Assembly (NCBI RefSeq): GCF_964204645.1
Contig: NC_134031.1
Span: 18,979,910-19,043,909 of the forward strand
DNA from: Tubulanus polymorphus
Taxonomy: Eukaryota > Animalia > Nemertea
Direction: 5' to 3'
DNA length: 64,000 bases
In this document: positions 1,705 to 63,993 of the stretch, piece after piece
How the letters are laid out: every line of letters starts with the position of its first letter
How positions within the stretch are numbered: position 1 is the first letter of the stretch
The notes under the pieces: model-generated
The model's database searches: none
Seen by the model: the letters and a program-made list of their open reading frames with translations, nothing else
What the model was told of the DNA's origin: nothing
Made by a program: the position numbers and the translations under genes

Positions 1705-4700
1705 GTGTTGACAATTCACGGTCGAACTCGGGATCAGAAACAGCATCTCACTGGAAAGGCCGACTGGGACGTCATCAAGGCTGTGAAGTATGTATATACA
1801 AATCAACCTGAAATATGAAACAGAAACTCTTTGCTGTTTCATGACCTGCTCTGAAACATGAAACACTTTTTTTATTGTGGTGATGTCAGAGTAGTGAAGT
1901 GAAACAAGAACCTTTTGGAAGGGATTCAAATGAATAAAACTAATATTCAATTTGTCATCTAAAATACTGGATATTCCTGACAGGGTGGCCACTGACCTGG
2001 AAAACTCAGGGAATCAGAAAAACCTAGAAGAAATCAGGGAATTTGACAAAAAGATCTGGAAAAATTTGGATATGTTATTGACCACGCATCTCTTTATCAA
2101 TACATCTTAAACAAAGAAATTCCTCGCGTAATTTTGTGTTATAACATGGAAAAATCAGGGAAAACTCGGGGAATTTGTAAATTGGTGCAAAGTGGCGCCA
2201 CCCTGTTTTAGGATATAGCCGAAGCGTTGACTAGCTCAGGTGAACATTTCGGACTAATTGTGAGATATTATATCATCGTTACAGCACTGGTTCAGAGTGT
2301 TTCCAGTTCATGTCTCGTTGTGTGCGCGCTAACGGTTTATAGATTATCAAATTGCGTTGTTGTTGTTTTTCCGTTCGGTTAAACTCGCCAGGTCGGCGGT
2401 CACTGAAGAAAAACACCGCGCACGAATATTGCAAGTGACGTATTGTGTAATGAGGAATTCCCTCGTGAGGGAACCTTATAGGTCACTCGTACGGCAGCAA
2501 TGGTGGCGGGTCTGATTTATGACTCATAGGTGTAGTACGCACAGACTATCGGTATTTCAGACGACCTGTCATCATCGCCGTGACGACGATGAGGTCGTTA
2601 TTGAATCTATATCTGATTATTGCACGATTCCCTCGATTCGCGGTTGGAAATGTTTTTCAGATCGTTTTTCATTGTTCTCTAGTTAACGTATGACCTGGGG
2701 CGGGGACTCCGTTGGGATCCCGGGACGGGGGGCTTCACAGGGGGATATAACATACTACATTTCTTCTATCGAAACGAACAAATCGTTAACAGATTTTGCA
2801 TTCTCTTCTTTAAACTATGAGATTTCAATTTGTGGGGATATATATTGGAACATTTCAATTTTGTGGCCATTCCTCCTGATAGTGGCATCGATCCCTCCTC
2901 TCTCCTTTTGTTCCGAAACTTCCGAAACTTCTTAAACTAGTTTTGGAGGTGTGTGATTATTCATTGAAACTTTTTTTACCCTCCTCCCTCCGTCCCGACA
3001 TTTCATCAATGTCTACATCACGATAACATAGAGAGACACAGATTAGCTTCGTTCCTTTATGACTAATACTCTCTGATTGGTCGGTTGGTTGGTTGGTGAT
3101 CATCATGTCTCATTCATTGTCGACAGAAAGAAGAATCGTAAATTGTTTGATTTGTGTTCGTCGAAACGCAGCATGAAAATGTTAGTCAGAAACCAATTGT
3201 AGCTTATTAAACGACCGTGTTGTTACTGTGTCTCTTTCTTCCCTTATTCGATTTCAGTTGCTGCTTTAGTTAGAGTACGAAACATTGTTTTCTTCTTTCG
3301 AAGTTAGGTTCATGTTGCGAACATCCATTACTGTAAGGTCGAAGGCCCTGAGAAACTCAACTAATCAAACTACCGTTAGTTACAGTATCACAACACATTG
3401 TCCTAAAGCGTCCGAGTCTTGGGTTCTTTGTTTACTAGTTTACTTGATTTCAGAAAAAGCATCCTGAAATCCCCTATGACATCACTGAATGGTGTTATAG
3501 AATCAAAGTGAAAAGAAAAATAGCAGCCACTTTCAGCCACACTATTCATAATGGCTTTTCAAATTAAGTTGACAACATTTGATGATATCTTTGGAAGAGA
3601 TTTAAGGAGCTTCTATTTTTGATTTCAGAAAAAGCAGCCTCCTAAATTGCCTTATGACCTCACTATAAAATGATGTTATAGAATCAAAGTAAATCTCATT
3701 TAAAGAATAAAAATCTTGACTTTGTCGGCAACATTTATTGAAAAATCTTAACTAATTTTAGCCAATTAGCTTTACTAGTTGAGAGAACCACAACCGCTTG
3801 GCTTTGTTTGTTGCATTTGTGTTTTGAAAGATAGTGGAGATTTTAAGAATAATGGCCACCACTTAAACACTATTCATAATGTCGTTTCATGTTAAGTTGG
3901 CAACATTTGACGATATCTTTGTGAGATTTAAGGAGCTTCTACAACGAGCCTGCCTTGATATGATGAAAATTCTAAATCTTCCAGTATTTTTATTTGGCAC
4001 CGATGCCCTTTTACCTGAGGGTGAAAGTTCAATCAATAAAGGCAGCTCTTCTCTTGTCAACCAGTTCCAATATTCTCATTCACCCATCTCTCCGCGATCT
4101 GCAGTTTCTTTTGATCTGACGGAGCCTTTATAGTTGATGAGAAATGATTCACTAACCATCAAACCGAAAGAGACGAGAGAGAGTTGTGAGTTGTGAGTGA
4201 CCTGATCACTTTGTGACTATCAGGATTTCTATGAATTGCGTAATATAAACTCACGTCAACATCTTATCATTGGCTTTTGATTTTAGACGAGGAGTTGCTA
4301 AACCATTATCCAGTTACGTACTTGTCAATGTAAATGGCAAAATTATATTAAATTTCTTCTCGTATTTTCAGGCAAGCTGTCGGTATTCCTGTGATTGCGA
4401 ATGGCAATATTTTAGATTTTAACGATATAGAAGATTGTTTACGGTATACGGGAGCTGATGCTGTCATGTCGGCTGGTAGGTTCTTGCTCTAAGGTTCAGT
4501 GCAGGACTTTCAGTGCATAGTTGTTTATTTCACCCTAAAACGTGAAACAGGTCGTACTCTGTAGGTTTACTGTTTCTATTAGGAATCACATGCTTTAAAT
4601 GTAGTACTAAGAAGCTTCATCAGGTGAATGAGTTAAGTCGATGAAGAAACAATAGTGTTTATAGGGAGACTGTCACTGATTCGAGTACTGCCTGTTTTCA

Positions 4701-5586: not shown

Positions 5587-8573
5587 CGATGGAACTACAG
5601 TGAGATGTAACATTCAAGGTCGAGATGTGTCGGAAACTAAAACTGCTGTCGAACATTCAAATATCGGAGCTGATTGTGAAGAAAATGATCTGAATTTAAT
5701 GCATTTATGGTCGGATTCTGACGGCGACTCAGAAGAGAGTGAAAATAATACCTTATCTGTAAGTTCAGTAATTACCTACCGATATATACCCTACTTAATT
5801 CAGTTGCGAAGAATAAGAAATTCTCTTTACGTTGGGAATAGAATGTTGACAAGGCTAGAGTTTCTAAAGCACAAAAAAGCAGAAGATTTTTATGGATTTT
5901 TTGTTCAAGATTTTCGGTTGAAAAAAGAATTCGAAGTTTTTGATAAATTCAGCAGTTCTGTCATTGAGGGTTTGACAACCTTAATTCAGTTGTGAACGAA
6001 TTGAACAAACATGCATTTTCAGAAAGGGGAGAAGAAGCAATTGCGCTCGGAGCAGAAAATCGCCGGTAAGAAAATACGCAGAAAGAAACAACTGATGAAC
6101 CGACGCCAGAAAATACGAGAAGAGCGTCTGCAATTACGAGGTGAAAATCATTTTCAAGAAGTGTCAGTAGTCGAGTCATTTTCGAGGAGATGATGGTAAC
6201 TCAGACTTGTTCATTATTTTTGGTGTTTTCTCATCAAATAGTTTATCAATCTCGAGTCCAAATAAAATGATAACATAAAGACACTACTTTTTCACAAAAA
6301 CCATTGATTTATAAGATTGTCGATGATTATATAGTAAACTGGTAAGTTAACTGATTTGTTGTTGAAGTTCAGTAATGTAAATGAAGTCCTTAGGATATTT
6401 TCTTAAATATATATAACTTTATTTGGAGGAAAATATAGAAATATAAAATTTTGCTGAGCTTTACAAATCTTAGATTTAGATATTAGACTCAATAGCTGAT
6501 TATTGAAGTGTGATTTCTGGTTTGTTTAGAGGTCGGTGAAGCTGAAAGTGAACATATATCGAAATATGACAAGAGACAAATAACGAATGAACGTTTAAAA
6601 GAAGCATTGAAAACAGGATTAAGAGTTTGTATCGATCTCAGTTTAGAAGACACAATGAGCAAAAAGGTAAAGAAGCTGAAAGAATTCTTTTGTCGGTGGT
6701 TGCAATCACTGTCTCTTCTCGAATGGTCCAGGCAGCATTTTACCAATACTACTGAATGGCTTAGCATCAAAATGTGAAGTGACATCGATCGCCTTATACG
6801 GTTATCAATCTGCAATCGGCCCTCAGACAACAGACAAATTAAGCGAAATCAAATTTCTGTCGGCTTTCCGAGACCATAGTACCGTCCTTACAAAAGCTAT
6901 TCGTCAAAAGCTCCCAAAGCCTCCTTGAATAATATGGGAGTAGGCAGCAGATTGATACCTGAATTAGTACCTCTGTCTAATACTGATGTAACACTAAAGA
7001 TGATGGATATATTGTATTTAAGGAATGCAGTCGACTCGCTCAACAGTTGTGTAGATTGTATGGATACAATCGTCAATCAGAAAACCCACTTTCGCTTCAT
7101 TTTACCGGCTTTGATAAATGTGGAATATTGTACAAAGAATGTCAGCGAAAAAATGACGGTTTCGAACAATACATCGTGAGTTTAGAAATAGATTTTTCGT
7201 TTCATGCTCTAAAATGTCAGGAATTGGTTCCACAGTTTTTACAGAGATTCGCAGTTTCTTAGGGGGGAAAATCAGGGATTTCCGTATTTATTTTTCCCTG
7301 ATTGGAGAATCGGGGAATTCTGACTCGTGTCTTTGAAATCATCAGGGAAAGGTCAAAGATTTTGAATTGTTGGCCTCTTGTTGTGGTGATGAGTGGAACC
7401 TTTTGATTAGAAACAGCCCCCACTGAGGATATCAGGGAATTTTGATAAAAAATCAGGGAAGATATAAGGGAATTTGGATTTTCTGATCTGTAAGAAACCT
7501 GCAACTGAAAATGGACGGATCTTAACTCCGTAGTGTCGGGCTTAGAACTGTTGGACTGAGTGTAATGAAATGTTGTTGAATTCAGGAAAGAATTTGCCCC
7601 TGACTCCGAACTGAAATTAAAATGTTGTTTATCTTGTTTTTGTCAGGTGAATATGCACGAGGAATTGCACGGTGATATTTTCGATCCGGCGGATATCGTT
7701 TATCTTTCGCCCGATTCTGAGAATGTTTTAGAAGATCTCGATATATCGAAGGTCTATATGATTGGAGGATTGGTTGATGAGAGTGTCACGAAGGTATGAG
7801 TCTTATTTTCGAATTTATCTTAGCAGTTATATTCAATTTCAGCACACATATTTTAATTTGAAGCTCCCAAGACCCATTTTCACAGACTATGAAAGATCAA
7901 ATTAGTTCATTTTCTGGCCTAATTTTCACAGGTCTTGATTGAAAACTAACTTTTGAATTGATTGAGCGAGAATTAAACAATACGTGAGCACAGTCAAGAC
8001 TTAGATTTCAGACCAGTCTAAGATATCTTAGTCTATAGCCATCCTTATAACTTCAAACTAGTCTTACGATTCAAGATCATTGGACTTTACACACGACTAC
8101 ACAACTGGTATCTAACTTAATTTTAGTCAGATTCAACTCAGAACTGAACAGACCTGGTCACCGTTGTTTTGTACATATCCTCACATTTTCTTTTCCTTGT
8201 ATTTCTTTTTTTCAGAACATAACACAAAGTCGAGCGAATTCTAGTCATATTCAAACAGCCCGGTTACCTATAGATGAATACATGGTGAAAGCTGATGTGG
8301 GAACTTACAGTCAAATTCTAGCTCCAAATCAAGGTATTGTATGCAATGTTTTATGCTCGAAACAAAGTTGAAAATATACCATTTAGAACGAAGTACTTTT
8401 ATATTGCCTCATTGAATAGATATTCTTTCACCGTGTCAATTTATGCGTTTTTCACTTTTGCAGTCTTTCAAATTCTTTTGACGTACTACGCGACGCGAAG
8501 TTGGCCGAAAGCATTTCAAACCGGTATTCCAGCGAGAAAAGGTTTCATTGTCGACGAAGCCTACAAATTATGA
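5587..8573 (+). CDS. TRMT10B: tRNA methyltransferase 10 homolog B-like (SPOUT Trm10 family); probably the C-terminal part of a DUS1L-TRMT10B fusion
   Basis: Exons 5587-5758, 6023-6140, 6530-6666, 7023-7175, 7647-7793, 8216-8333 and 8464-8573 join in phase. Motifs: RVCIDLSLEDTMSKKE, RLAQQLCRLYGYNR, IVYLSPDSENVL, VYMIGGLVDESV, TARLPIDEYM, ILAPNQVFQIL, W..A...GIPARKGF. Confidence 0.9.
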
Positions 8574-22211: not shown

Positions 22212-23956
22212 CCATTGATTTCAAGTTAGATTCGTTCATATATGATACTTCTAAAGCCAGGGTCGCCTTCTTAAAAACAAGAAGATACCTTGGACCTGTC
22301 ATACACTGCCATGAGATGAAGCATGGACAGTGGAGAGTACTGTTACATTTCAATGTTCACTCCTCGAACTTCACTCCATTCTAACTAGCATATTATCTTA
22401 TTTAGTTACACTTATTCACAAACTTATTTCACAAACCTGAAAAGGTTAAATTCTAAGTTTATTTAATCTCCAACGAATGATGAATAGCTGTAACTGTAAA
22501 TAAGACTTAATCATACACATCTGTGTGGATATCAGCAACGCGGCCCAGGAGCGGATTTAAAACAGAGACCGGTAACCAGTCTAATTGACGAGGACAGGCA
22601 ACCAGTCTAGTGGTGAGCTAAGATATACTCACATGCCACTATAGGAATTTTTCGCTGGGTAGTTAGTTTACATATTTACCGCCCATGTTTTTTCTAGGGG
22701 CAGCACTTGACGGTCAAAATCTGACACCACACTAGCGGCGCGGAATCAACCGACGAATATAGCGCAATTCTTGACATGAAACAAAATCGTCAATTTGACA
22801 GAGAATCTCTTTTTAAATAACTATCTGTAATATCAAATATAGCTGTAGGTAAAAAATCTTTAACAAGTTTTAAGAAATAGTTTATATTCCGTTTTTGGTT
22901 TTTTTATTACTAAGAATTCTTCACACAATGTTTTAACACATTTCTCACACGTGACAAAACAAACAAACAAACAAATCATAACAAAATAAAATCGGTTTTT
23001 AAGCACTTCATAGAACAAAAATACGTATCTAAAACAATGCTTTCAGTTTTGCGCGAAGGCTTAAAACTAGTCAGTAACCGGTCTGTGGTTTAGTTCACGA
23101 TCGGATATTTTCAAATAAGCCCATCCGATTAAGTTTAGGTCACTAACTAGTTTAAAACATGATTTCAGAATGATTGAATGATTGTTTGAAGCTCCATTAC
23201 CAAAAGAGTGTCACTTCTTTAAGTACTAACTATGAAGTCCACACGGTTATGTACTTAATACCTTCACTGAAGCATAATCAAGTCACTTGTGATATGAAAT
23301 TAATACAATCAAATAATTGTTAAATGATACAAGCAGTAGACTATATGGAGGTAATATATCTGTATATTTCAATCATTATCTTAATACTTTGATTCAAGGC
23401 TACCTGAGCCAGGAAGTACATTCGAATATTTTTTGCAAGGGCAACTTTTAACTCAGGGTCCAGCTACACTCAAGGCTTGGATTTGAGACTGGTCAAAGTC
23501 CATCTCTGAGTTCTATAACTAACCAATCTCATAACTTAAGACAAAACATTTAACCACAGTCTTATGGACTAGTAGTCAAGCCCTGAGGTCAGCAGAAACC
23601 AAAATTTAATAGCGCTTAAACCGTGGATGTTAATGAGTAAATACAAGTATTCGAAATCACTCTTATTGGGGAATAACCTAGACACAGAACTTAGATCGGT
23701 GGTTTGAGAACTGTCATAGACTGATAAAATAGTAATCACAATTTCACACGTGGCAGTAAAACGTGCCGAACTTCACTGCAATTTCCTTCCCTTCACCCAT
23801 AGTTACAATACTCTACAATATAATGAACTACTTGAGAATTAAGTCCGAGCTAAACGAGGTTTACTGTGGAAATGATTAAAATCACAGAAACCAGCGCGAT
23901 CTCAAACACAGGTAGTATCCATTCATCTATTGTTTTCACCGAGATAAACCGACGTT

Positions 23957-50384: not shown

Positions 50385-50697
50385 CCTGCACTGATATTGA
50401 TAAGTGACAAGCTGCGGTAAGCCGCTAATCATCAGCGTCTTATACCAGACACTGTCACTGCCATACGTTCTATGCGCGAACCCGCGCTGATTTACATCGT
50501 CCGGTGGCGCCGCCTCGCGACATAAATTACAAACCGTCCGGTGGCGCCGCCGAGTGAGATAACCGCGAACCAACCCGGAAATCAATACATCGGAAGAGAA
50601 GTACCCGGATAATGACATCAGCCTAAATTATTCTCCATTTTACGGATTTTCTTTCTAAATTTACACGTTTTCAGGGCTGTTAATATACGACAACGAT
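50385..50697. promoter_or_regulatory. Bidirectional promoter between SNAPC4 (-) and VAMP (+)
   Basis: CpG-rich stretch of about 300 bp between a minus-strand donor at ~50385 and a plus-strand donor at 50698. CCGGTGGCGCCGCC occurs twice (~50501 and ~50538). Confidence 0.65.
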
Positions 50698-53600
50698 GTA
50701 AGTAACTGCGCTCAAGGTTTTAAACTACCCCCTGAATCGAAAAAACTATCATAAATCGTCGTTCGATCGTCAGATTTCACTGGAAACCGACGTGAAAATG
50801 TTGACGTGAAATGATGATTCACTGAAAATTTGACATTTCTCGTATCTCGTAATGTTCAGGCCTCACACATCCACATCGAGATATCTCGATGTGGAATCGA
50901 CTGATTTCATTTGTTTTTTGACCGTGTGTTTAACCAACCCATTACACTGCCTGATCTGAATTATCTGAATTAGCATTTTATGAGCAGTATTTTGGCTTTT
51001 TTGCTCGAGAGCAAATTTATGAGGGCGGTCTGCTGGCTGGGTGGGATAGGGGGTGGGCATGATGTTTAGGGATCGAAGGCGTTCTAGGGTATGATTTAGA
51101 TAATGATTACATCTGATTCTAGTTTATGGTGGGCTTGTTTCAGTATTTGAGGAAAACTTAAAAATATTTTTAAGCCGTGCATGAAAAAATAGGCTGGATT
51201 GCAATTGCGTCATATGTATTTCGACAGCTTCAATGAATCAGTTTAAGTAAGATTAGTTGATGATAGATTTATTAGATTTATTTCGGAAATAATCAATTGT
51301 AAAATGTCGCCAGGTCTCAACCACCGACTGGAGCACCACCTCAGGGAGGCCAACCCGGGTAAGTTTTAAAATATCTGTCGTTTTGTGTTACAAGTGATGG
51401 ATATATATATATATATGTACATACGCAGTGTGCCAGTTTTAATTTCCTTTGTTAAGGTATGATTACCCAATTCCTAACAGGAAACTAAATAGATTTCTGC
51501 TTAAGACGTTTTTATTATTTCATGCATGAGGTTTTGTGTGTGTGTGAATAGAACTGCTTTTTTCACAGTTTCCCATGCGTCACTTCCTCACATTTTTTCT
51601 GAGTATAGAATTTACGTTTAGAATTTATGTTCGCCTAAAATAGAATTTTGTGCTTTTCCATTGAAGCGTTGGGTGTCTCAGATTCAGTAAAAACCTTTAG
51701 TAATCGCATGTTGGTTCACTGTTCAGAGTAGAAGGAGGCACTGATGTGTGTATTTCAGATAAGAAAATGTTTGGACTGGGCAAATGGAATTAACGGGACT
51801 CAGGGAAAATCAGGCAATTTCTAGATTCACTTTTCAGAGAATTCTGATTCTTTTCTTGAAAATCAGGGAATTTGAATTTTAAGTACTTGCTCCTGTTGAG
51901 TGGGCACGAGGAATCTCTTGCAAAGAAACGACCCTCACTGAGGATTTATTCCTGGAAATTTTCATCAAGGGTCGGGGAACAATCCGGGGATTCCCTGATC
52001 TGTAATAACCCGAGGGAGATGTTGACTAAGGGTGGCCTAACCGCATGTATCACCATATATGGCTGTATTCTGGTGTGAATGCTTTGGTCTCGCAGCATAA
52101 GGCGCTGTAGTTAATCTTTGACATATTGGTTAATTTGAATAATTAATTATCGCCTATTTAATTAGCTGTTAATGAGCTATTTGTAGCTTCGCAGTAGTAT
52201 ATTCTGTATATGTAGTCAATTATTTATTTAAATGTCTCTGTAGTTGTAATGTAGCTAACCACTGTCAAACATGAATATATTTTACGAGATATTTCTTGTT
52301 TTTTATGTCAGATTTTGTGTATTTCTGAAGGTTCATGATTTATAAAGGATCTCTTATGTCATTGATAAATGTTGGCTGATAAAAATTCTTTTTCAAATTT
52401 GAAATGATCTGTGAATACATTAGTAGATAAGTGTTTAGAGTTAGCCCAGGATGGCTGTGCTGAACTTCCAGTTCATTTTCACTGAGTTTACGGTAATTCA
52501 GAACTGTTGAACTGAGTTCAGTGGATAAACTCAACTATTAGACCGTCCCCAGGAAGAAGTTATTATTACCTATTTAGAAAACTGGCCCCTGCATCCATTT
52601 CCAACATTGAGTTAAAACATTGAAAATGATTTTGAACTAAATAATTAATTCTAGATTCAAACTGAACTGGGAACTGTTTAACTGGGGCCTGAGGCTGGTT
52701 GCATAGTCATGGCTTTGTTCAGTGTGCAGCCAACTTAGTTCTATAGCTGATTCAAAAACTTAACACCAGTCTAAGATCACTTTGGCTCTATTGCCAGTCT
52801 AACAATTTGAGACCAGTCTTAAGATTTAAGACCACTTCTGGACTTAAGCCACAGTTATGCAACCAGCCCTTGGGTTTTAAGAATCGTGGAATCTTAGGGC
52901 CTACCTGAAATGAAATGCAACATAATCAAAGACAATTTCAAGGTTTTCCACTTTGTCTGATGTAAACGATTTTACTGTTTCTATTCAGGGCGACCGATGA
53001 GTAAGTAATAATAGTAGCATCATTTACACACTACTGATCATGCAAAACAGGGATTGAATTCAGATGAAACTTTGAATTCGATCTCTCACCGAGTCCAGTT
53101 CCAGAGTCAAGACTTTAAAAAGTCTAGTTGAGTTGATTTTAATCTCGCCAATCACCTTTAGGACTCTGGATCTGGCGACACTTTTTTACATATACTTTAA
53201 GACATATTTTAATGCATTAAACTTCTTTGATCTTATAATAACATATTTAGAAAGATACGTTTTTATCTGTGTGTCAATTAAATCCTCAGAATTATAGTCG
53301 GCATCTTGTTTGTGTGGAAAAAAATCGATCTAAACTTTAAATTCTTCTATTTTTTGCTCGGTTTCTTGAATTTTCGTAATTATCACGTTTAGGATTTTTA
53401 CATTTTCAATCATCTCAGGTTATAATACATATCTATGCATTATAGAACAGAACATTTTCTTTTATATGTTTGTATTTTCTTCTGGAAATATATCTTTATG
53501 CTTTTGATGTTTTGCATAAGAATTGCGGAAAAAGTGATTTAGAATGTTCGTCCGTCATCATCATGGAATTTAAGTGAAATCACTTTTAATTGCATCAGGA

Positions 53601-56600
53601 AAGATTTTCCATATTTTTAGCACCGATCAAAAGTGTTTTTATCTTTTTCGAATATTTTGCATGTAATCATATAGAAAAACGTGTATAATATTCAAAATTA
53701 GCTTTAGAGATTGTAAAATCCAGATTTAGGGTCTTATTTATGGCGCCAGTTTCAGAGAGAGCTGTGGAAAATAATTTCGGTTATGAACTGGACTGCGATC
53801 AGATTTCGATGTCTAATTTATATGCATTTTGATATTTACAGGTCAGCTCCCGGAGTTCCGCAGGGAGGCAGTAAACGCCTTCAACAAACACAAGCGCAAG
53901 TCGACGAGGTACGAATGATAGACACAATGAAAATTACTGTACACAGTAAACCTCTTCTAACTATGACAAAAACGAAATTTTCTGATTCCCTCGTATTTCT
54001 TTTGTCCTGAGTTCGGCTATGCGAAGTTAACCGTAATTTTCAGGGTTCGATTGATGTGAAAAAATATGAAAAATTGACGAGTGCTTAAAAAAAATATGAT
54101 AAGTTCCGATGTTTAATTAAAAGGATTTGAAAAATATGTAAAATCCTGAATTCATCAACCTGACCGACCCGTGTATTTTTTTTTCTGTAAAAACTACGAA
54201 ATTTCTCTTTAAATTCGTTTTTTCTCGTAGGTTGTGGATATTATGCGGGTAAATGTCGATAAAGTTTTGGAACGTGATCAAAAATTATCAGAATTAGACG
54301 GACGTGCAGGTACGTAAACTGAGTCACAGTGTGTGTGTGTGTGTGTCGCTCATCTCAACCAGCTACTGAAACACATCCAGAAAACATGGCCGCCTTCATA
54401 TTCCTCTCTATGACATCATCAAATCGGGACCACCGGCGTGCGTTTAGTCAAGATAACCCGATCAAAATTCAATCTACTTTTGTCTAGATTCTGTATAAAA
54501 AAAATAGATAATCACTCTCGATAAACTCGGATGGATCTTTAGACTTCATCATAATTCGTGGAATTTGAGAAATTATGGATAGATTTCAATTGAATCTTAG
54601 AACAAATCCGGCATCGTTGTCCTAAAATACACACTAGCGACACCTGGTGGTTCCTAGCTTGTCCCAAGTAGCTTGCAGAGTCCACATTGTCCAGTGATTT
54701 ATGACTCATTAGATTTAGATTTAACTCAGTAATTCAATGATGTCATAGGAATTACATGTGGGCGGCCATCCTGAGCGTTTCTTTATCAGTCTGATTTTAT
54801 TCCGAACCATTTCGGTTCAAAACGATCTTTCTATCCCTCAATCTACAGGTGAATAAGAAATCTTTAAAACACTGGATCCAGTTCCACAATTCTGAGTGAA
54901 GAAACTCGTTGAAATTGATCTAATTTTAACCACAGACTATAGTCCATGTTTTAACGGACTATAGTCCATGTTTAAATGGACTATAGTCCATGTTTTAACG
55001 GACTATATAGTCCATGTTTAAATGGACTATAGTCCATGTTTTAACGGACTATATAGTCCATGTTTTAACGGACTATATATTCCATGTTTTAATGGACTAT
55101 AGTCCATGTTTTAACGGACTATATAGTCCATGTTTTAACGGACTATAGTCCATGTTTTAACGGACTATAGTCCATGTTTTAACGGACTATATTCCATGTT
55201 TTAACGGACTATAGTCCATGTTTTAACGGACTATATAGTCCATGTTTTAACGGACTATAGTCCATGTTTTAACGGACTATAGTCCATGTTTTAACGGACT
55301 ATAGTCCATGTTTTAACGGACTATATAGTCCATGTTTTAACGGACTATAGTCCATGTTTTAACGGACTATATAGTCCATGTTTTAACGGACTATATAGTC
55401 CATGTTTTAATTCATCAGAGTTGTTTGAGTCTCTCAACTGTTGAACTTGGTCTTGATGATAAAATCATGGCTAAAATGCGCAATATTTTCTCGTCGCTGG
55501 AATTAGTTTTTAGTTCGCTGCATGTCGCGGTTTATTCGGGTCCTGTCAGAACTTTACTCTAAGTTGCGAACATTTCTCCATCTTTCTCTTTCGAAAAAAA
55601 AAAAAACACAATCCAGTTTTCGATCCTCGTCAGAATTTTCCGGTGATGGAATTTTTTTTTGCTGTCCGTTTTTTTGTTGAGTGAGATGAGTTTCCGTTTT
55701 TATTTTCTGTACAGATGCTTTACAAGCGGGTGCGTCACAATTTGAGGCGAGCGCCGGAAAACTGAAACGGAAATATTGGTGGAAGAATTGCAAGGTATTT
55801 TGTGTTAACATGCATGTCGTATCCCTCCCGCCTCTCCTCGCGCCTCTCCTCGCGCTCTCACGTGGAACCTCGTTAAAACAAAGTGAACCAGAAAATCTGT
55901 TGTTTCTACTGATTATCCAGTTATGATATTACAATCAAACTTGAAGTATTTAAGTCATTTCTGTCCGGCTTCAAATAGACACTAAGTATTTGGACTATTT
56001 TCAAATATTCTGGCTTGGAACAAAATGCTGAATTTGTCAGTTAGGTCCTTATATCCAAATTTGTTATAACGAATGTTCCACTGTAAATGTATATTCAACT
56101 CCTAGTCATATCTGAAATCAAGAGTTCCACTGGTTGGATTTCTTACATTTGACTCTTAAGCTTCATCGACCATGAACAAAATTTATTAGCTTAAGAGTCC
56201 AATTAAAACATTTAACCAGGAACTGGATTCTGATCCAGTACTGCTGGTACTGACTCGAATACTGATTCAGTTGCGTGGATACTGATTCAGTACTGCAGGT
56301 ACTCACTCAGTACCTCCGTACTCACTGAGTATGGCGGGTACTCACTCAGTAGCATGGGTACTGACTCAGTTCCGTCGGTCTTCAGACCCTAAAAACATCG
56401 AGTTTTAAAACGGCACCGCTTCATTATATATCTTCACTTGCTTAATTTGACAATTGAGTTTTTATACTGGTACAGGTGACCTTGACTCCGTGCATGTCTG
56501 CCCAGGGTTTGCACGTGTTGAACTTGAATAGTCCCAGGGAATATTTTGAAAGTCGTCAGTTAAAACCATGGTTTCTAAATGTTACTATGGTGGATCTCAA

Positions 56601-59600
56601 CTAGATTGAGGATTTACCCCTAGGGATAACTCTGATACTCAGTCTATGAAACCAGGCCCAGGGGCTGGTTCCATAGACAGGGCTTAGACTTAAGACTGGT
56701 CTAAGACAAACTTCGTTCTATAGCCGATCTAACAACTTAAGACCAGTCTTAAGGTTTAAGACCACTTTTGGTCTTAAGTCCTGACTATGGAACCGACCCG
56801 AGAAACTCAAATTTTTGGTTTAATCACTATTGGTTACTTCATATTTTCAATGATGAGCACAACATTTCAAACTTAACCGTTTCGAAGTAGATATCATCAA
56901 ACTGACGCCCTTGATGGCTGTTTCAGAACAATTTCATTTGCGTTATTGGAAACAGTATTAAGTTATGAATAGCAACCAATGATTCCGAATTTTTGAGATG
57001 AAGAAAATGATGTTTTCAAGCCCCGGGGCGATGTTGAGAAAGCTATATTTATCAAGATGACGTTTGTTCAAACATTGATAATCAATTTGTCTCGAAGGAG
57101 AACGTCTCGTTCTATTCCTATAAATGTCTCCACACTTAACCTTTCAATCTCGTTGACCTTTAACGGCGTTCTTTGAGATGCAGTCAGTTTGAATCGCTGT
57201 TTCATATTTTTGATACTAGAGAAAATACATCACACTTTTCTAATAGTCGTGCTTGAATCAAGCTTTTCGGGTTGAAATGTTGCTAGAACTGTCGGGATCC
57301 TGAACTGAGTCCGACAGTGGTCTTGAATCTTAAGACTGGATCCAGTATTTTTGAAATGAATATTTCTGCAAATAGTTTCTCAGACTATTTCAAGTGAGAA
57401 ATATTTTTGAATAAAAATCAATAATCAATACATTTATAATCTGATGACCAAAACCAACAATTGATGATTTAACAATTTTTCCCGACAGTTTTGACTAGTG
57501 GGATACCCGCAGTGCTACTGTGGCAATCGAAGATTCCACGTATGGCCCACCAGGTGTCGCTAGTAGTTACTCGGTCTTCGGCGTTCAATTTCTTCTACAT
57601 TTCAATTAAAACTCAATTTTTTCCAAAATGAATCGATTATCGATGAAAACTAAACCGATATCTGAAAAGAAAAATGAATTGTATAATTGGTCGGTGCTGT
57701 GATAATATATGGATTCTGGAGTCTAAACATTCAGTTCAAATTTCATCGAAAATGAACTGATTTTGACAACGAACGACCTATTGCTCGTCACGCCATCTGG
57801 TGGGAAATCTGGTGTTACGGATTCACCATTGTTAAATCATCAACTGTGGGTTCTTTGCTCATAAACTCTGTGGAGATGAATATTAGTCTCGTCATGTTAT
57901 AATCTATTATTATCAATTCAATGTTGTTCAGTGATTATTCTTATGTTCTTGTTGTTTTAAACAGAAAGTTTACAAGCCGGTGCCAATCAGTTTCAAACCG
58001 CTACCGTGCGAATAAGGAGGAAATATTTCTGGCAAAATTGCAAGGTTGAAAAATCATATTTCATTTTTTTTTTTAAATTCTTCTTCCGTTTGAAATTTCC
58101 GACTTTACTCTGAAAAAATGCTTCGGTCTTTCCGTCGAAACGTAACGGTTCTTCTCGGAAATATTCTCACTTTTCTCTCTGAATTCTTTCGGTTTGAAAA
58201 AAGAGAAAATTTAATTTCAAAAACTGCGACATTTTCTTCTAAAAGAAAAACAGGAAAATTAAATGTTGGAAGAAATTACAGAGTTTTAGGTTTAAGAATC
58301 AGATGAAATCACCAGAGACTCCGAACTTGGCATCCAAAAAAACCCACTTAAGGATGAATTCAACCCCTCTAAAATCCTGAGATGTGGAGATGACTGAATC
58401 ACTGATAAATTTTCCAACATTTATTTTTGCTAGTTGAGATGGAATTCTTTAAAAGTGCATGCGATTTGACCTTGAGGTCTGTAGAGGTCGGTTGTGGGTA
58501 GCGTTTCATTTTCAGCTTCTCCGTGAAAAACTTTTAAAATTAACTGTAGAATTCTCTACTTTTCATTTGAAAGAGAAGAAAATCACTATTTGAAGTAGTT
58601 CTTTAGCGGCTAGGACTTTCTTAGTCGTCGGAGTTCGGGAGGTGGATTCATCCTAGATAAATCTTTCGGACAGAAGGTTTTACATCGGCACAATGACTTT
58701 CTACAGTGCTGCCCCCTATTATGGTTGCGGAATAAGGTAGCGTGCGAATTGGGAATGTTTTTTTTTTCTATCAGCGGTGTTGGTTATTAGGGACCCGGCT
58801 TCTACTACAGAGAAACCAAGGCTGGGTGCAGATTTAGACCCGGGGTCCGTGAACCCAGTTCCACAGTTCAGATTAGACTTTTAGATCTGACTGTAAATCG
58901 AAGTGCCCCTGTTTTATAAACTTGGATCCAGTTCCAAACAGTTGGCCCCACTCCGCGCGGTTGCGCCAACGCGCGGGATTTACGCGAAGTAGCAGAAACA
59001 AACATGGTCACATTTTGAACGTTAGAAATTGTACATGAATGGGGGACCTCAGTGGTTAAGATGGATCTTTGAACGGATCTCTGACAACTGACTACACTTC
59101 TACAGTCAATTCTACAGATTTAAGTCAGATTTCCACCAATATCTATGGAACTGGATACTGGTCTATGAAGACCGGCTGCTCTGAATGAAAATGGCCCCGA
59201 GAATCTTAAGCTGATTGGGGTTGATCAGTGGGCCTGCCCCACAGCTACAGCTGAGGAAGGAATCTGATGAACTGTCCAACAGCTACGGCTGAGGAATCTC
59301 TAATGAACTGTGGGTACCCATCTGCCCCACAGCTACGGCTGAGGAATCTCTATTGAACTGTGGGTACCAACTGCCCCACAGCTATGGCTGAGGAATCTCT
59401 AATGAACTGCACTGGTACCCACTGCCCCACAGCTATGGCTGAGGAATCTAATGAACAGTACTGGTACTCACTGCCCCACAGCTATGGCTGAGGAATCTCT
59501 AATGAACAGTACTGGTACCCACTGCCCCACAGCTATGGCTGAGGAATCTCTAATGAACAGTACTGGTACTCACCGCCCCACAGCTATGGCTGAGGAATCT

Positions 59601-62600
59601 CTAATGAACAGTACTGGTACCCACTGCCCCACAGCTATGGCTGAGGAATCTCTAATGAACAGTACTGGTACCCACCGCCCCACAGCTATGGCTGAGGAAT
59701 CTCTTATGAACAGTACTGGTACCCACCGCCCCACAGCTATGGCTGAGGAATTTCTAATGAACAGTACTGGTACCCACTGCCCCACAGCTATGGCTGAGGA
59801 ATCTCTAATGAACTGTGGGTACCCACTGCCCCACAGCTATGGCTGAGGAATCTCTAATGAACTGTACTGGTACCCACTGCCCCACAGCTATGGCTGAGGA
59901 ATCTCTAATGAACTGTGGGTACCCACTGCCCCACAGCTATGGCTGAGGAATCTCTAATGAACTGTACTGGTACCCACTGCCCCACAGCTATGGCTGAGGA
60001 ATCTCTAATGAACAGTACTGGTACCCACTGCCCCACAGCTATGGCTGAGGAATCTCTAATGAACAGTACTGGTACCCACTGCCCCACAGCTATGGCTGAG
60101 GAATCTCTAATGAACTGTACTGGTACCCACTGCCCCACAGCTATGGCTGAGGAATCTCTAATGAACAGTACTGGTACCCACTGCCCCACAGCTATTGCTG
60201 AGGAATATAATGAACAGTACTGGTACCCACTGCCCCACAGCTATGGCTGAGGAATCTCTAATGAACAGTACTGGTACCCACTGCCCCACAGCTATGGCTG
60301 AGGAATCTCTAATGAACAGTACTGGTACCCACTGCCCCACAGCTATGGCTGAGGAATCTCTAATGAACAGTACTGGTACTCACTGCCCCACAGCTATGGC
60401 TGAGGAATATAATGAACAGTACTGGTACCCACTGCTCCACAGCTATGGCTGAGGAATCTCTAATGAACAGTACTGGTACCCACTGCCCCACAGCTATGGC
60501 TGAGGAATATAATGAACAGTACTGGTACCCACTGCCCCACAGCTATGGCTGAGGAATCTCTAATGAACAGTACTGGTACCCACTGCCCCACAGCTATGGC
60601 TGAGGAATCTCTAATGAACAGTACTGGTACCCACTGCCCCACAGCTATGGCTGAGGAATATAATGAACAGTACTGGTACCCACTGCCCCACAGCTATGGC
60701 TGAGGAATCTCTAATGAACAGTACTGGTACCCACTGCCCCACAGCTATGGCTGAGGAATCTCTAATGAACAGTACTGGTACCCACTGCCCCACAGCTATG
60801 GCTGAGGAATCTCTAATGAACAGTACTGGTACCCACTGCCCCACAGCTATGGCTGAGGAATCTCTAATGAACAGTACTGGTACCCACTGCCCCACAGCTA
60901 TGGCTGAGGAATATAATGAACAGTACTGGTACCCACTGCCCCACAGCTATGGCTGAGGAATCTCTAATGAACAGTACTGGTACCCACTGCCCCACAGCTA
61001 TGGCTGAGGAATCTCTAATGAACAGTACTGGTACCCACTGCCCCACAGCTATGGCTGAGGAATCTCTAATGAACTATAACACGTCATGTTTTCAGATGAT
61101 GTTAGTTATTGGTGGTATAGTGCTGGTTATTGTAATCATTATAATTGGTAAGAACAGGAATCAGCGAAATATTTAATAAACGGCGAATTCATTTTGAAAA
61201 TTGAAACTATGGATCGTCTTCCATGTTTATTCATCGATGTTGTAGAGGTGACCCTGAATATAAAACACACCAAGTGTCGCCACCTACTGAGTGTTTACTA
61301 TACTAACTAGCGTGGATGTATCGTTTATGTCGTGTATAGTTCACCGATTGTACCGTAGCGATTTCTCTTCCAAACCTACCACCAGGGGGCGCCTTTGAGG
61401 GGCTTAAGTCTTAACTGACTGACTGAACCTCTGAATTCGGATGTGTAGATGAGGTAGATGATCTCTGTCGTACAATCGGTCAGCGTTACGCACTATTGTT
61501 CATTATAGTGATTGAAAAACCAGCGATATATTTAATCATCATTAGGCACCAGTTTTATAGAATTCATACTCTGTCTATAAAACTGTGGCCTCAATGGTAC
61601 AAAAATATACCACAATATGAGACGCTTTCATTGATTCCAGTTTTGAGGAAATTGCCGCAAGAGAACTTCAGAAAAAACCGGGAATATAAAACCTTGGGTT
61701 CTGAACAAACTGACGCAAAATTCTGTCCTAGGATCAGTTGAACAATCATGGCTGAGATTTACGCCCAATCTAAGACCATCTTATTTCCGAAGCCAATCTA
61801 ACAATTTGACACTATATTTTAACCCTTTCAGTGCTTACTTATCAATACCCAAAATATAATTTTAAAATTTACTGAAAGGGTTTAATCGCAGCATTGGGGC
61901 CTGAACGAAAGAACCCTATAAAACCTCAAGTACTTGATCCTTTTTGAAACTGGTATAAATGAATGCGTCAATTACCCCCCCCCCCCCCTCAATATCCCCC
62001 TTCCCCCTCCTCAATACCCCTCCCCCCACCACCACCTACATATTATATTTGTATGGGATCTGATGATGATGTTAATTGATTTATTTACAGATGATGATTA
62101 TAATGGGTGTTGTTATCGGCCTTGTTGTTATAGTGGTTGGATACTGGCTTTATACTAAGTTCCATACACCTGCCGCAGCTGCTGCTCCAGCTGCCGGAAC
62201 GGCAGCCGGTACCGGCGCGCCGCCGCCCGCAGCCGGTCCGAGTCCCGCATCGGGCCCGGCCGCCGATTAGTCTCTTTAATCCATTTTGACTCCTACGATG
62301 CCCATTGGTAATGATAAAAATATCGAACCGTCAAAAATAACGATTCTATTTCGTGATTAGCTTTCACCGCCGCGTCAGGCGTGGTCGCAACTGATACTCA
62401 CCAGGTGGCGTTGCGACCGTGCCGAGTGTGCATATTTCTTTGCATGTTACCTATCTGCATCATTTACGATTTTCTCAGTTTTTATCTTCGTCATTTTTCA
62501 TTCTGATGATATTTTGTCTCTTTCTCTTCGTAAAAGTGTTTTCGATGATTTATCGCGGCTTCGCTTTAGTTTTTCGGTGACCCCTGGCTCCACACGGCCT

Positions 62601-63993
62601 TGCAGGGGTCACCGGCCCCGAACGATTTTGTAGAGATGCGCACCACCACCTGTTCTGGTGAACTTCAAAATATTCAAAACTTTTCGCTGAAATCTTAGAT
62701 CGTAATTTCCAAAAAATTCGTCAAAACTTCTGGCTTTGATGGATGAATAAAGAATTAAAGAATAAGTTTTCGAAGCGCTATTTAAAGATGTCATGATGTA
62801 ATATGACTTGATGAATATTGATAGAAGTAAATAAGACTTAGTGAACTGTGGGCGGGAATTGTGAGCCTTTCTGGATTAAAGAGAATCCAAACTCAGAATA
62901 ATTGAAATTACTGATTCGAAACAAGCCTTGAATTTCTCCAACGCAAAACACTAAAAGTGTTCGTAGTGTTATTGATTTTGTTTTGTCCGTACAATATTTT
63001 TGCAAGAAACTGATTCTGAATATTCTGGATCCTGAGATAAATGTATTATACGCAGGTATCAATGTGCATCCTGGAACCCAGCTCTTCGTACATGCATCAA
63101 TTGTTGATACCTGAGTGAGCCTAGCACCGGCCTAGTTCGAGTTTTAAAGTCCTGCTCCTCACCTCTCTGAGCTCTTACCATATTCAGAATCAGTTCACAT
63201 AAATTCACTGTTAGTTAAATGTTGTTTTATTCACCGCGTTTTTTCTCTCTCTCTCTGAAAGTCGAGCAGACGACTTTCGATCGACCAATCACCATCGAGC
63301 TCTGGACGCGAGGATTTTGAGTTGTTTTCGGTTTACCTATGCCGTCACATTTGAGCCACTGGCGCGGTACCGCGGTTCTGACTTGTGTTCACGATTCGAA
63401 TCTACTCGTACCTTACAAATTGCATCCCAATATCGTTATCTGATATAATTTGAACTTTGTCAAGCATCTCATATCTCAGAATTTGTGGTAAACCTCTTGT
63501 CCCATGAGCAATCATTTCAGAAATGTTGCTGGCAATGAGAGATAATCCCCGATTACTATGACCGGTCTGCATTAGATTCATCTGTTCCGGAACAACAGAC
63601 TAGAAAGTGAAACTGAACCTGGCACAATTATTTATTTCGAGTTGGCAAAATGACCAAGAGAAAATTGAGACAAAAATTTTTCTAATTGGTCACCATAGCA
63701 TAAAATTTTTGACCGAATTCCGCAGTTGTTGGATTTTGTTTGAATCTAGAGTTGATTTTGATTAGAAGTTGGCTCTAGATTCAAATTCCGATTGGGAACT
63801 GCGCAACCAAATTCTGACAGTTTGTTTAATAAGAAATGTCCAGCTACAGTTGAGTGTAATGTACGCCGATCTTGTGATATCTGCACGGCGTGTTGTGTTG
63901 TGACTTTGTTGTTTTATTTTGTATATTTTATTGTTTTATAGATGTGGATTATTTTGATATCTGTGATAGTAGTTATTTTAGTCATTATCATCG
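50696..63993 (+). CDS. VAMP2: Synaptobrevin / VAMP1-2-3-type R-SNARE, alternatively spliced; 3' end beyond the window
   Basis: Start codon split AT|G (50696-50697, then 51314). Exons 51314-51358, 52989-53000, 53842-53908 ([12 protein letters not shown]), 54231-54309 ([26 protein letters not shown]), 55715-55794 or 57965-58044, then transmembrane exons 61096-61147, 62091-62270 or 63942-63993. The symbol denotes the family, not one-to-one orthology. Confidence 0.93.
52693..52869. mobile_element. MITE, TTAAGACC family copy
   Basis: GGCTGGTTGCATAG ... TTATGCAACCAGCC, with internal similarity to 33380-33519. Confidence 0.7.
52989..53000 (+). CDS. 12-nt frame-preserving microexon of synaptobrevin
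   Basis: ttttactgtttctattcag|GGCGACCGATGA|gtaagt. Phase 2 at both ends, matching the flanking exons. Confidence 0.65.
   Translation, partial: GDR
54934..55410. repeat. 22/24-bp minisatellite with palindromic core
   Basis: Unit GGACTATAGTCCATGTTTTAAC (some units with an extra TA), about 21 copies. Confidence 0.95.
55715..55794 (+). CDS. Synaptobrevin SNARE C-terminal exon, variant A (canonical)
   Basis: [27 protein letters not shown]; 80 nt; acag|...|gtattt. Confidence 0.92.
56235..56375. repeat. Degenerate ~20-bp tandem repeat
   Basis: About 6-7 GTACTGACTCAGTACTGCGG-like units. Confidence 0.6.
56662..56799. mobile_element. MITE, TTAAGACC family copy
   Basis: GGTTCCATAG ... CTATGGAACC termini with the same internal sequence. 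It abuts another repeat (~56565-56660) that is the reverse complement of ~27930-28025. Confidence 0.7.
57965..58044 (+). CDS. Synaptobrevin SNARE C-terminal exon, variant B (duplicated, divergent)
   Basis: [27 protein letters not shown]; 80 nt with the same phases as variant A; long pyrimidine tract then acag; donor AAG|gttgaa. Confidence 0.85.
59235..61075. repeat. 51-bp minisatellite
   Basis: Unit CTGCCCCACAGCTATGGCTGAGGAATCTCTAATGAACAGTACTGGTACCCA, about 36 copies, with 48- and 49-bp variants. Confidence 0.97.
61096..61147 (+). CDS. Synaptobrevin transmembrane exon 1 (internal, 52 nt)
   Basis: ttttcag|[18 protein letters not shown]|gtaaga. Confidence 0.85.
61819..61885. mobile_element. 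piggyBac-like MITE, internally deleted copy
   Basis: TTAACCCTTTCAGT...ACTGAAAGGGTTTAA, only about 65 bp, abutting a fragment of the TTAAGACC MITE family. Confidence 0.6.
62091..62270 (+). CDS. Synaptobrevin transmembrane exon 2 (terminal, with Pro/Ala/Gly-rich luminal tail)
   Basis: tttacag|[59 protein letters not shown]; AATAAA at ~62746. Confidence 0.8.
   Translation: MMIIMGVVIGLVVIVVGYWLYTKFHTPAAAAAPAAGTAAGTGAPPPAAGPSPASGPAAD
63942..63993 (+). CDS. Synaptobrevin transmembrane exon 3 (internal, 52 nt)
   Basis: ttgttttatag|[18 protein letters not shown]|gtaagt; same length and phases as TM exon 1. Confidence 0.82.

What the first reader, a model, noticed from the sequence alone, without database searches (positions are those of the whole stretch)
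55715..58044. Mutually exclusive exons swap the C-terminal half of the SNARE motif and the juxtamembrane linker
A = [27 protein letters not shown] and B = [27 protein letters not shown]. Both are 80 nt, phase 1 in and phase 0 out, so including both or neither shifts the frame. B retains the protein pattern despite many synonymous differences, which suggests purifying selection. It changes the last zippering layers and turns the conserved WW into FW, a region known to govern fusion triggering. The Q-F bond cut by tetanus toxin and BoNT/B is kept in both.
Basis: partly seen in the sequence, partly recalled or inferred. Interest (0 to 1): 0.8.

Follow-up and report, generated by a model that had tools for sequence, protein, structure and literature searches.

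The report
Alternative SNARE-motif exon pair in synaptobrevin
The single neuronal-type synaptobrevin gene of the ribbon worm Tubulanus polymorphus carries two old, selectively maintained copies of the exon for the membrane-proximal end of its fusion helix, so one gene can probably make two versions of the vesicle fusion protein.

Summary
Exon A (55715-55794) and exon B (57965-58044) are both 80 nt, both bounded by AG/GT, and both enter in phase 1 and leave in phase 0. They lie in the Tubulanus polymorphus VAMP/synaptobrevin gene.

- **Annotation:** RefSeq isoforms X1-X3 all use A. B is unannotated.
- **Frame:** including both exons gives a stop inside B. Skipping both shifts the transmembrane exons out of frame.
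- **Selection:** synonymous sites between A and B are saturated (pS 0.76) while pN is 0.28. This is an old duplicate under purifying selection. Core layers +4 to +6 are identical, and +7/+8 change conservatively (A to T, L to I).
- **Origin:** B is not copied from another VAMP paralog in this genome.
- **Conservation in relatives:** the tail of Lineus longissimus RefSeq isoform X5 is a B-type exon read out of frame directly after exon A, so the exon exists and is spliced in a distant nemertean. An environmental contig carries an 80-nt B-type exon.
- **Same design elsewhere:** Owenia and another metagenome animal have three tandem 80-nt copies at this position. A Lingula-like protein carries an alternative version of this exon behind identical upstream exons.

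Not shown: a B-only mRNA in Tubulanus, or any functional difference. I found no paper describing this. I rate it a new variant of a known kind; the closest known case is SNAP-25 exons 5a/5b.

The parts
50696..50697 (+). Last two bases (AT) of the first exon; the start codon is split AT|G across an intron (donor gtaagt)
   Evidence: joining this to 51314 gives the N-terminus of RefSeq XP_074655854.1 (P0001).
51314..51358 (+). Second coding exon (proline/glycine-rich N-terminus)
   Evidence: for the sequence; it matches P0001 residues 1-16.
53842..53908 (+). Exon encoding the start of the SNARE motif (...[12 protein letters not shown])
   Evidence: it matches P0001.
54231..54309 (+). Constitutive 79-nt exon: N-terminal half of the SNARE motif including the zero-layer arginine. 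It ends in phase 1 with one G carried over.
   Evidence: Pfam Synaptobrevin 28 bits, profile positions 15-40.
55715..55794 (+). Exon A: the canonical C-terminal SNARE half (layers +4 to +8) plus the juxtamembrane linker
   Evidence: It is used in all three RefSeq isoforms. The peptide is identical in Lineus and a chiton.
55795..57964 (+). 2170-nt intron between A and B, rich in interspersed repeats
57965..58044 (+). Exon B: the divergent alternative copy (QFQT...RIRRK...FWQN type). Its acceptor is good and its donor (gttgaa) is weak.
   Evidence: B-type relatives.
61096..61149 (+). Alternative transmembrane exon 1 (MM... type, with a gt donor)
   Evidence: It resembles the TM exon of Lineus isoform X7. 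Not in the Tubulanus RefSeq models.
62091..62270 (+). Alternative terminal exon 2: transmembrane helix plus an Ala/Pro/Gly-rich tail and the stop codon
   Evidence: Not in the Tubulanus RefSeq models.
63942..63993 (+). Alternative transmembrane exon 3 (MW... type), the one used by RefSeq isoforms X1-X3
54633..54650 (.). One arm of a perfect 18-nt inverted pair flanking exon A (the partner is 57547-57564)
   Evidence: The 18-mer has about 1,719 copies in the genome and the flanks align loosely. These are two copies of an interspersed repeat, not a dedicated selector.
57547..57564 (.). Second arm of the 18-nt inverted pair

Best explanation
Exons A and B are an old tandem duplication inside the one neuronal-type synaptobrevin (VAMP1/2/3-like R-SNARE) gene of Tubulanus polymorphus, and they work as a mutually exclusive pair.

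**How it works.** Exon 3 ends in phase 1. The spliceosome joins it either to A or to B, and then to one of three alternative transmembrane exons. Both exons are 80 nt, so only transcripts with exactly one of them keep the frame. With both, a stop codon falls inside B. With neither, the membrane anchor is read out of frame. Such products lack the anchor and are probably degraded.

**What the two forms are.** A gives the canonical v-SNARE. B keeps core layers +4 (L), +5 (A) and +6 (F). It changes +7 (A to T) and +8 (L to I), most of the surface residues, the basic linker (KLKRK becomes RIRRK), the first membrane-interface tryptophan (WW becomes FW), and K91 to Q. The B form should therefore still pair with syntaxin and SNAP-25, but with different final zippering, different linker-lipid contacts, or different regulator contacts. 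It is probably used in a subset of cells or vesicle types.

**Shown:** the anatomy, the frame logic, use of A, long-term purifying selection on B's phase-1 reading frame, presence and splicing of the B-type exon in another nemertean, and the same exon multiplied in other lophotrochozoans.

**Inferred:** B-only mRNA in Tubulanus, how the choice is regulated, and any biophysical difference.
For: - **Anatomy and chance:**
- **Gene model:** it is validated by RefSeq proteins for this species.
- **Frame consequences:** B read in phase 0 stops at codon 17. The transmembrane exons read after skipping lose the hydrophobic helix, and one of them stops.
- **Selection:** A versus B gives pS 0.76 (as saturated as A exons compared between phyla) and pN 0.28, Fisher p=7e-4. 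B versus the environmental B-type exon gives pS 0.78 and pN 0.19.
- **Intragenic origin:** no other VAMP-family locus of this genome is B-like.
- **Lineus:** residues 100-125 of isoform X5 (XP_064642882.1) follow exon A directly. They match the phase-0 translation of the B-type exon of contig L007 at 19/26 residues, E=3e-9. Back-inference forces the B-diagnostic states Q11, R/G16, I/V17 and R/W18 in the proper frame. Tubulanus B fits 20 of 26 positions and A fits 17.
- **Environmental exon:** L007 positions 3353-3432 form an 80-nt AG/GT exon of B type.
- **Tree:** on the 27 columns, B groups with L007, L008 and P0258 (support 90/90).
- **Same exon position multiplied elsewhere:** Owenia has three 80-nt AG/GT copies. 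Contig L034 has three and L038 has two.
- **Lingula:** UniParc protein P0134 is identical to Lingula isoform X10 through exons 2-3 but carries a different exon-4 peptide.
Against: - None of the three RefSeq isoforms of Tubulanus contains B.
- No B-containing Tubulanus protein appeared in the word search or in the search of 1.84 billion representatives.
- B's donor, gttgaa, lacks the usual purine at +3 and the G at +5, so it is weak.
- The only B-containing nemertean model I could see (Lineus X5) includes both exons and is frame-shifted.
- Four other lophotrochozoan loci (Ridgeia, Paralvinella, Mactra, Liolophura) have only the A exon.
- The selection statistics rest on 26 codons.
Confidence: 0.8

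Rival explanations
1. B is a relic. It was a working alternative exon for a long time but has recently died in the Tubulanus lineage, for example through its weakened donor. It is now skipped always and is drifting.
For: B is absent from the RefSeq isoforms. The donor gttgaa is weak. Tubulanus B carries lineage-specific changes at otherwise very conserved places, such as W89 to F and +7 A to T.
Against: The frame is open. The acceptor and polypyrimidine tract are intact. The length is exactly 80 nt. The core layers are kept and pN is far below pS. B-type copies in other animals also have weaker, non-GTA donors, as regulated exons often do. The RefSeq models for this species also miss two good transmembrane exons, so the annotation is plainly incomplete.
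Confidence: 0.13
2. B acts mainly as a poison or switch exon. It is included together with A to give a frame-shifted, anchor-less or degraded product that lowers synaptobrevin output, rather than to make a second protein.
For: Lineus RefSeq isoform X5 is exactly such a double-inclusion product. In Tubulanus, double inclusion gives a stop inside B.
Against: Selection is visible on the phase-1 protein reading of B, not on the phase-0 reading. The phase-0 peptides of Tubulanus and Lineus differ, and only Tubulanus has the stop, while the phase-1 peptide is conserved. Heptad core residues would not need to be conserved for a poison exon.
Confidence: 0.05
3. B belongs to something else, such as another gene, a retrocopy of a paralog, or an assembly duplication.
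For: None beyond the lack of annotation.
Against: B lies on the same strand, between exon A and the transmembrane exons, with matching phase. It is only 62% identical to A at the DNA level, so it is not an assembly duplicate. It occurs once in the genome, and no paralog is B-like.
Confidence: 0.02

Closest known systems
SNAP-25 exons 5a/5b (vertebrates)
   Same: Both are tandem-duplicated, equal-length, mutually exclusive exons inside a neuronal SNARE gene that swap part of a SNARE helix and the adjacent membrane-attachment region (PMC2581893; found).
   Different: SNAP-25 is a different SNARE (Qbc, not R) and the case is in a different clade. There the swapped part is the N-terminal helix end plus the palmitoylation linker, nine residues differ, and functional differences have been shown in mice. 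Here 13 of 27 residues differ and nothing has been tested.
Alternative transmembrane and tail exons of invertebrate synaptobrevin (RefSeq isoforms of Mytilus, Biomphalaria, Physella, Liolophura, Lineus)
   Same: This is the same gene family and the same logic of combining alternative 3' exons. Tubulanus also has three transmembrane exon choices.
   Different: Those events change only the membrane anchor and the lumenal tail. The SNARE motif exon is single in the molluscs I checked.
Alternative exon-4 form of the Lingula-type synaptobrevin (UniParc UPI00078A6760 = P0134) and the three-exon clusters of Owenia (L002) and contig L034
   Same: The same exon position, the same 80-nt length and the same phases. 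The 3'-most copy carries R16 and Q24, as Tubulanus B does.
   Different: These exist only as database sequences and no paper was found. The Owenia and Lingula variants group apart from Tubulanus B on a weak 27-column tree, so one-to-one orthology is open.
Paralog solution: VAMP1/2/3 in vertebrates, Syb/nSyb in Drosophila, several VAMP genes in clitellate-like metagenome contigs
   Same: Variant C-terminal SNARE and linker sequences are supplied for different vesicle classes. B-like exons sit in separate genes, each with its own exon 3, in contigs L016-L030 and in the intronless gene of L008.
   Different: Those are whole-gene duplicates with independent promoters, rather than one gene choosing between exons.

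Membership tests
Synaptobrevin / brevin-type R-SNARE (Pfam PF00957) | Sequence match to the Synaptobrevin profile | tested here: met
   exon 3 scores 28 bits and exon A 30 bits, both above the 26.4-bit cut-off although they are only pieces. Exon B scores 22.6 bits (E=9.5e-5), at profile positions 43-67 against 42-67 for A. The full RefSeq product carries PF00957.
Synaptobrevin / brevin-type R-SNARE (Pfam PF00957) | Arginine at the zero layer and hydrophobic heptad layers | tested here: met
   Exon 3 has ...LERDQKL.... Layers +4 to +8 are L, A, F, A, L in exon A and L, A, F, T, I in exon B (aligned to rat VAMP2 numbering from my own knowledge).
Synaptobrevin / brevin-type R-SNARE (Pfam PF00957) | C-terminal single transmembrane anchor directly after the basic, tryptophan-containing linker | tested here: met
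   Three alternative transmembrane exons start in phase 0 right after the ...NCK ending of A or B.
Mutually exclusive exon pair from tandem exon duplication | Adjacent homologous exons of equal length and phase, each with its own splice sites | tested here: met
   both are 80 nt, both AG/GT, both phase 1 to 0. The similarity scores E=5e-9 within the window.
Mutually exclusive exon pair from tandem exon duplication | Joint inclusion or joint skipping is non-productive | tested here: met
   there is a stop in B when it is read after A, and the transmembrane exons are out of frame when both are skipped.
Mutually exclusive exon pair from tandem exon duplication | Both copies kept by selection and conserved in other species | tested here: met
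   pS is much greater than pN. A B-type exon follows exon A in Lineus. Further B-type or multiplied copies occur in L007, Owenia, L034 and the Lingula-type protein.
Mutually exclusive exon pair from tandem exon duplication | Transcripts contain one or the other, with each used | not testable with these tools
   Use of A is shown by RefSeq X1-X3. No Tubulanus RNA reads are reachable here and B is absent from the annotation. In Lineus only a double-inclusion model was visible.

The most novel reading that the evidence does not exclude
The exon for layers +4 to +8 and the linker of synaptobrevin was already duplicated in an early lophotrochozoan. Since then it has been kept as a two-class alternative-exon cluster: a canonical A class and a 3'-placed B/C class with R16, a changed basic linker and Q24. 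The cluster survives in slowly evolving lineages (the nemerteans Tubulanus and Lineus, the annelid Owenia, the brachiopod Lingula). Elsewhere it was lost or turned into separate paralogous genes. One gene would thus encode two mechanistically different v-SNAREs, a natural experiment on the last zippering step and the tryptophan gate.
Probability: 0.4. Interest if true: 0.7.

Novelty: new variant of a known kind. Interest (0 to 1): 0.6.

Why it matters
The C-terminal layers and the juxtamembrane tryptophans of synaptobrevin are the part of the fusion machine that passes force to the membrane. Insertions or breaks upstream of W89/W90 abolish lipid mixing in reconstituted fusion (PMC7815645).

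Almost all knowledge of this region comes from engineered mutants of a sequence that is nearly invariant across animals. The A exon peptide is identical in a nemertean and a chiton. Here evolution has kept, for a very long time, a second version that differs at 13 of 27 positions in that very segment and is chosen by splicing.

This offers a natural isoform pair for asking which features of the last zippering step can vary and what they tune. It also shows that invertebrates with one synaptobrevin gene can diversify it by exon choice, where vertebrates and flies use paralogs. Finally, it flags an unannotated coding exon in the public Tubulanus annotation.

Tried and rejected
- **Fetching the Lineus gene locus:** isoforms X7 and X3 are not the product on record. 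The other Lineus isoforms did not appear in an N-terminus-restricted search. The Lineus evidence therefore comes from isoform X5 alone.
- **Other failed look-ups:** Liolophura X1 and P0339 were not on record. The P0258 contig has no retrievable DNA.
- **Metagenome scan query length:** An alignment of B-type open frames worked.
- **Search of 1.84 billion representatives with the B open frame:** no near-identical protein was found, only B-like relatives at 34-45 bits.
- **L007 against the Tubulanus genome at DNA level:** no match, so it is not a close relative.
- **The 18-nt inverted pair around exon A as a loop-out switch:** the pair is real and longer than in 200 shuffles. I rejected it as a dedicated element because the 18-mer occurs about 1,719 times in the genome and the flanks are repeat-like.
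- **B copied from another VAMP paralog:** rejected.
- **Literature:** four searches found nothing on alternative SNARE-motif exons in VAMP/synaptobrevin. A search for the sample accessions found nothing.
- **Joined spliced model:** All searches were exon by exon, by reference, or used proteins returned by the tools.
- **Vertebrate-type contigs:** three metagenome contigs with a vertebrate-type VAMP exon (L025-L027) could be human. I set them aside and did not analyse them.
Full report
**What is there.** The window is part of chromosome-scale contig C7 of a 268-Mb assembly. An open frame through one exon retrieved the RefSeq protein [quoted passage not shown]. Its 119 residues are reproduced exactly by the following plus-strand pieces:
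- a start codon split AT|G at 50696-50697 / 51314;
- exon 51314-51358;
- exon 53842-53908;
- exon 54231-54309;
- exon A, 55715-55794;
- a transmembrane exon at 63942-63993, which continues beyond the window.

The protein names confirm it.

**The observation.** Exon A and exon B (57965-58044) are each 80 nt. Each is preceded by a pyrimidine-rich tract and AG, and each is followed by GT. They share 50/80 bases and 14/26 full codons. Within the window the A peptide finds B at E=5e-9 and nothing else below E=0.19. Pfam's Synaptobrevin model matches A at profile positions 42-67 and B at 43-67. B occurs once in the genome.

**Frame logic.** B read in the phase it would have after A meets TAA at its 17th codon. 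If both exons are skipped, the three transmembrane exons are read in a frame that destroys the hydrophobic helix, and the terminal one stops after 21 codons. Only one-of-two inclusion gives a membrane-anchored SNARE. The A-B intron is 2170 nt, so steric exclusion is not the mechanism.

**Is B alive? Evidence from within the genome.**
- Between A and B, 76% of synonymous sites differ but only 28% of replacement sites do (Nei-Gojobori counts; Fisher p=7e-4).
- That synonymous figure is as saturated as comparisons of A exons between phyla (0.65-0.93). The duplication is therefore very old, and B's protein reading has been constrained for most of that time.
- Core positions are kept or conservatively changed: +4 L, +5 A and +6 F are identical, +7 changes A to T, and +8 changes L to I. 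Surface and linker positions carry most of the changes.
- The linker KLKRK becomes RIRRK, WW becomes FW, and K becomes Q before NCK. The layer assignment uses rat VAMP2 numbering from my own knowledge.
- No other VAMP-family locus of this genome resembles B (VAMP4-like, VAMP7-like and others). B is therefore an intragenic duplicate.

**Points against B being used.**
- The donor gttgaa is weak.
- The three RefSeq isoforms all use A.
- Those models also ignore two well-formed transmembrane exons, 61096-61149 and 62091-62270. The first of these is of the type used in Lineus isoform X7. The annotation is therefore incomplete.

**Relatives: nemerteans.**
- The word search returned only A-type proteins among the best hits, across many phyla.
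- Lineus longissimus isoform X5 (XP_064642882.1) continues after the A peptide with a 32-residue tail that looked meaningless.
- The search of 1.84 billion representatives with the B open frame produced an environmental open frame, P0260. I traced it to a 5-kb JGI metagenome contig, L007.
- L007 carries an 80-nt AG/GT exon of B type at 3353-3432, with the QFQT...RIRRK signature.
- Translated in the wrong phase (phase 0), that exon matches residues 100-125 of Lineus X5 at 19/26 identities, E=3e-9.
- The Lineus tail is therefore a B-type exon read out of frame directly after exon A. So Lineus has the exon in the same place, and its splice sites are used in vivo.
- Back-inferring which residues the proper frame can encode forces Q at position 11, R or G at 16, I or V at 17 and R or W at 18, which are the B-diagnostic states. 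Tubulanus B is compatible at 20 of 26 positions, A at 17 and L007 at 25.
- To my knowledge (untested here), Tubulanus (Palaeonemertea) and Lineus (Heteronemertea) span the deepest split of the phylum.
- The phase-0 peptides of Tubulanus and Lineus differ, while the phase-1 peptide is conserved. This argues against a purely poison-exon role.

**Relatives: other phyla.**
- In Owenia fusiformis (annelid; locus L002) the same position holds three tandem 80-nt AG/GT exons. One is A type, one is a close variant, and the third, 3'-most copy shares E1, T12, R16 and Q24 with Tubulanus B.
- Metagenome contig L034 has three such exons within 550 nt. The last has ...VKIRRK...WWQN. A related contig, L038, has the first two.
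- UniParc protein P0134 is identical to Lingula anatina synaptobrevin isoform X10 across the lineage-specific N-terminus and exons 2-3. It then carries a different exon-4 peptide, EQLQVGAQQFE...GRLKRKYWWQNCK. This is best explained as an alternative-exon isoform of the Lingula gene, although I could not fetch the locus.
- Ridgeia, Paralvinella, Mactra and Liolophura have a single A exon.
- In clitellate-like metagenome contigs, B-like exons sit in separate genes, each with its own exon 3. An intronless VAMP gene next to COX11 (L008) has an ESLQVGAQQFE...RIRRK segment.
- A maximum-likelihood tree on the 27 columns is necessarily weak. It groups Tubulanus B with L007, L008 and P0258 (support 90/90), and it groups the third Owenia copy with P0134 (88/85). 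Whether these are one ancient class or two is open.

**Mechanism of choice.** I found no dedicated selector.
- The perfect 18-nt inverted pair flanking exon A (54633-54650 / 57547-57564) is real and longer than in 200 shuffles.
- However, the 18-mer has about 1,719 copies genome-wide against zero for the control, and its flanks align as diverged repeat copies. It could still promote looping out of A, as inverted repeats do elsewhere, but it is not evidence of design.
- B-type copies in four animals have weaker donors than the A copies: GTT or GTG against GTA. This is consistent with regulated inclusion.

**Known comparisons and novelty.** Four literature searches found no report of alternative SNARE-motif exons in VAMP/synaptobrevin.
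- The closest described system is SNAP-25 exons 5a/5b (PMC2581893).
- Alternative transmembrane and tail exons of invertebrate synaptobrevins are visible in RefSeq isoforms, for example two transmembrane exons by three tails in Mytilus.
- The functional weight of the swapped segment is documented for W89/W90 and the linker (PMC7815645).
- Automated annotation has captured related isoforms in Lingula and Lineus. Exon B of Tubulanus is unannotated, and as far as I could search the phenomenon is undescribed.
- I class it as a new variant of a known kind.

**Limits.**
- No RNA reads of Tubulanus are reachable with these tools, so B-only splicing in this species is inferred.
- The statistics rest on 26 codons.
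Searches were exon by exon, by reference, or used proteins the tools returned.
- Three metagenome contigs with vertebrate-type VAMP exons (L025-L027) might be human. I set them aside unanalysed.

Noticed in passing
window 61096-61149, 62091-62270, 63942-63993: There are three alternative transmembrane exons. Two are short internal exons (MM... and MW... types). One is terminal, with an Ala/Pro/Gly-rich tail and a stop codon. The RefSeq models for this species use only the third. Mytilus RefSeq isoforms show two transmembrane exons combined with three tails.
   Followed up: partly
P0004 (Lineus longissimus XP_064642882.1), residues 100-131: This RefSeq 'isoform X5' is a double inclusion of the A and B-type exons followed by an MW-type transmembrane exon, all read out of frame. 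It is an anchor-less product and probably a decay target rather than a real protein isoform.
   Followed up: yes
L002 (Owenia fusiformis) about 22283-22362: A second, divergent copy of the exon encoding the start of the SNARE motif (...RRLMQTQAEVDA) lies about 60 nt after the canonical one, with an AG acceptor and a gt donor. Owenia may therefore also alternate this exon.
   Followed up: no
P0032, P0042, P0090, P0031 (spiders), P0109 (mayfly); L088/L089 at 3933-4010 and 6883-6960: Arthropod gene models contain two consecutive copies of the exon-3 peptide (VVGIMRVNVEKV... and VVDIMRTNVEKV...). Two metagenome contigs carry two exon-3 copies before one exon 4. This suggests a duplicated, probably mutually exclusive exon 3 in arthropod synaptobrevin, matching the Syb-like and nSyb-like forms.
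   Followed up: partly
window 54633-54650 and 57547-57564; genome-wide: An interspersed repeat family containing ACTAGCGACACCTGGTGG has about 1,719 copies (one mismatch allowed) spread over all large contigs, on both strands.
   Followed up: partly
window 54925-55400: An array of roughly 22-nt units (TATAGTCCATGTTTTAACGGAC-like) that are both tandem and palindromic sits in the intron upstream of exon A. It gives many overlapping inverted repeats.
   Followed up: no
window 50696-50697 / 51314: The start codon is split by an intron of about 616 nt (AT|gtaagt ... cag|G). The split is needed to reproduce the RefSeq N-terminus.
   Followed up: yes
L019, L059, L064, L070, L076; P0286: Metagenome contigs, several from one sample series, carry two complete divergent VAMP genes about 1.2 kb apart in tandem. 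One public gene model (P0286, 351 aa) fuses the two.
   Followed up: no
L025, L026, L027: Three metagenome contigs carry a vertebrate-type VAMP exon and could be human contamination.
   Followed up: no
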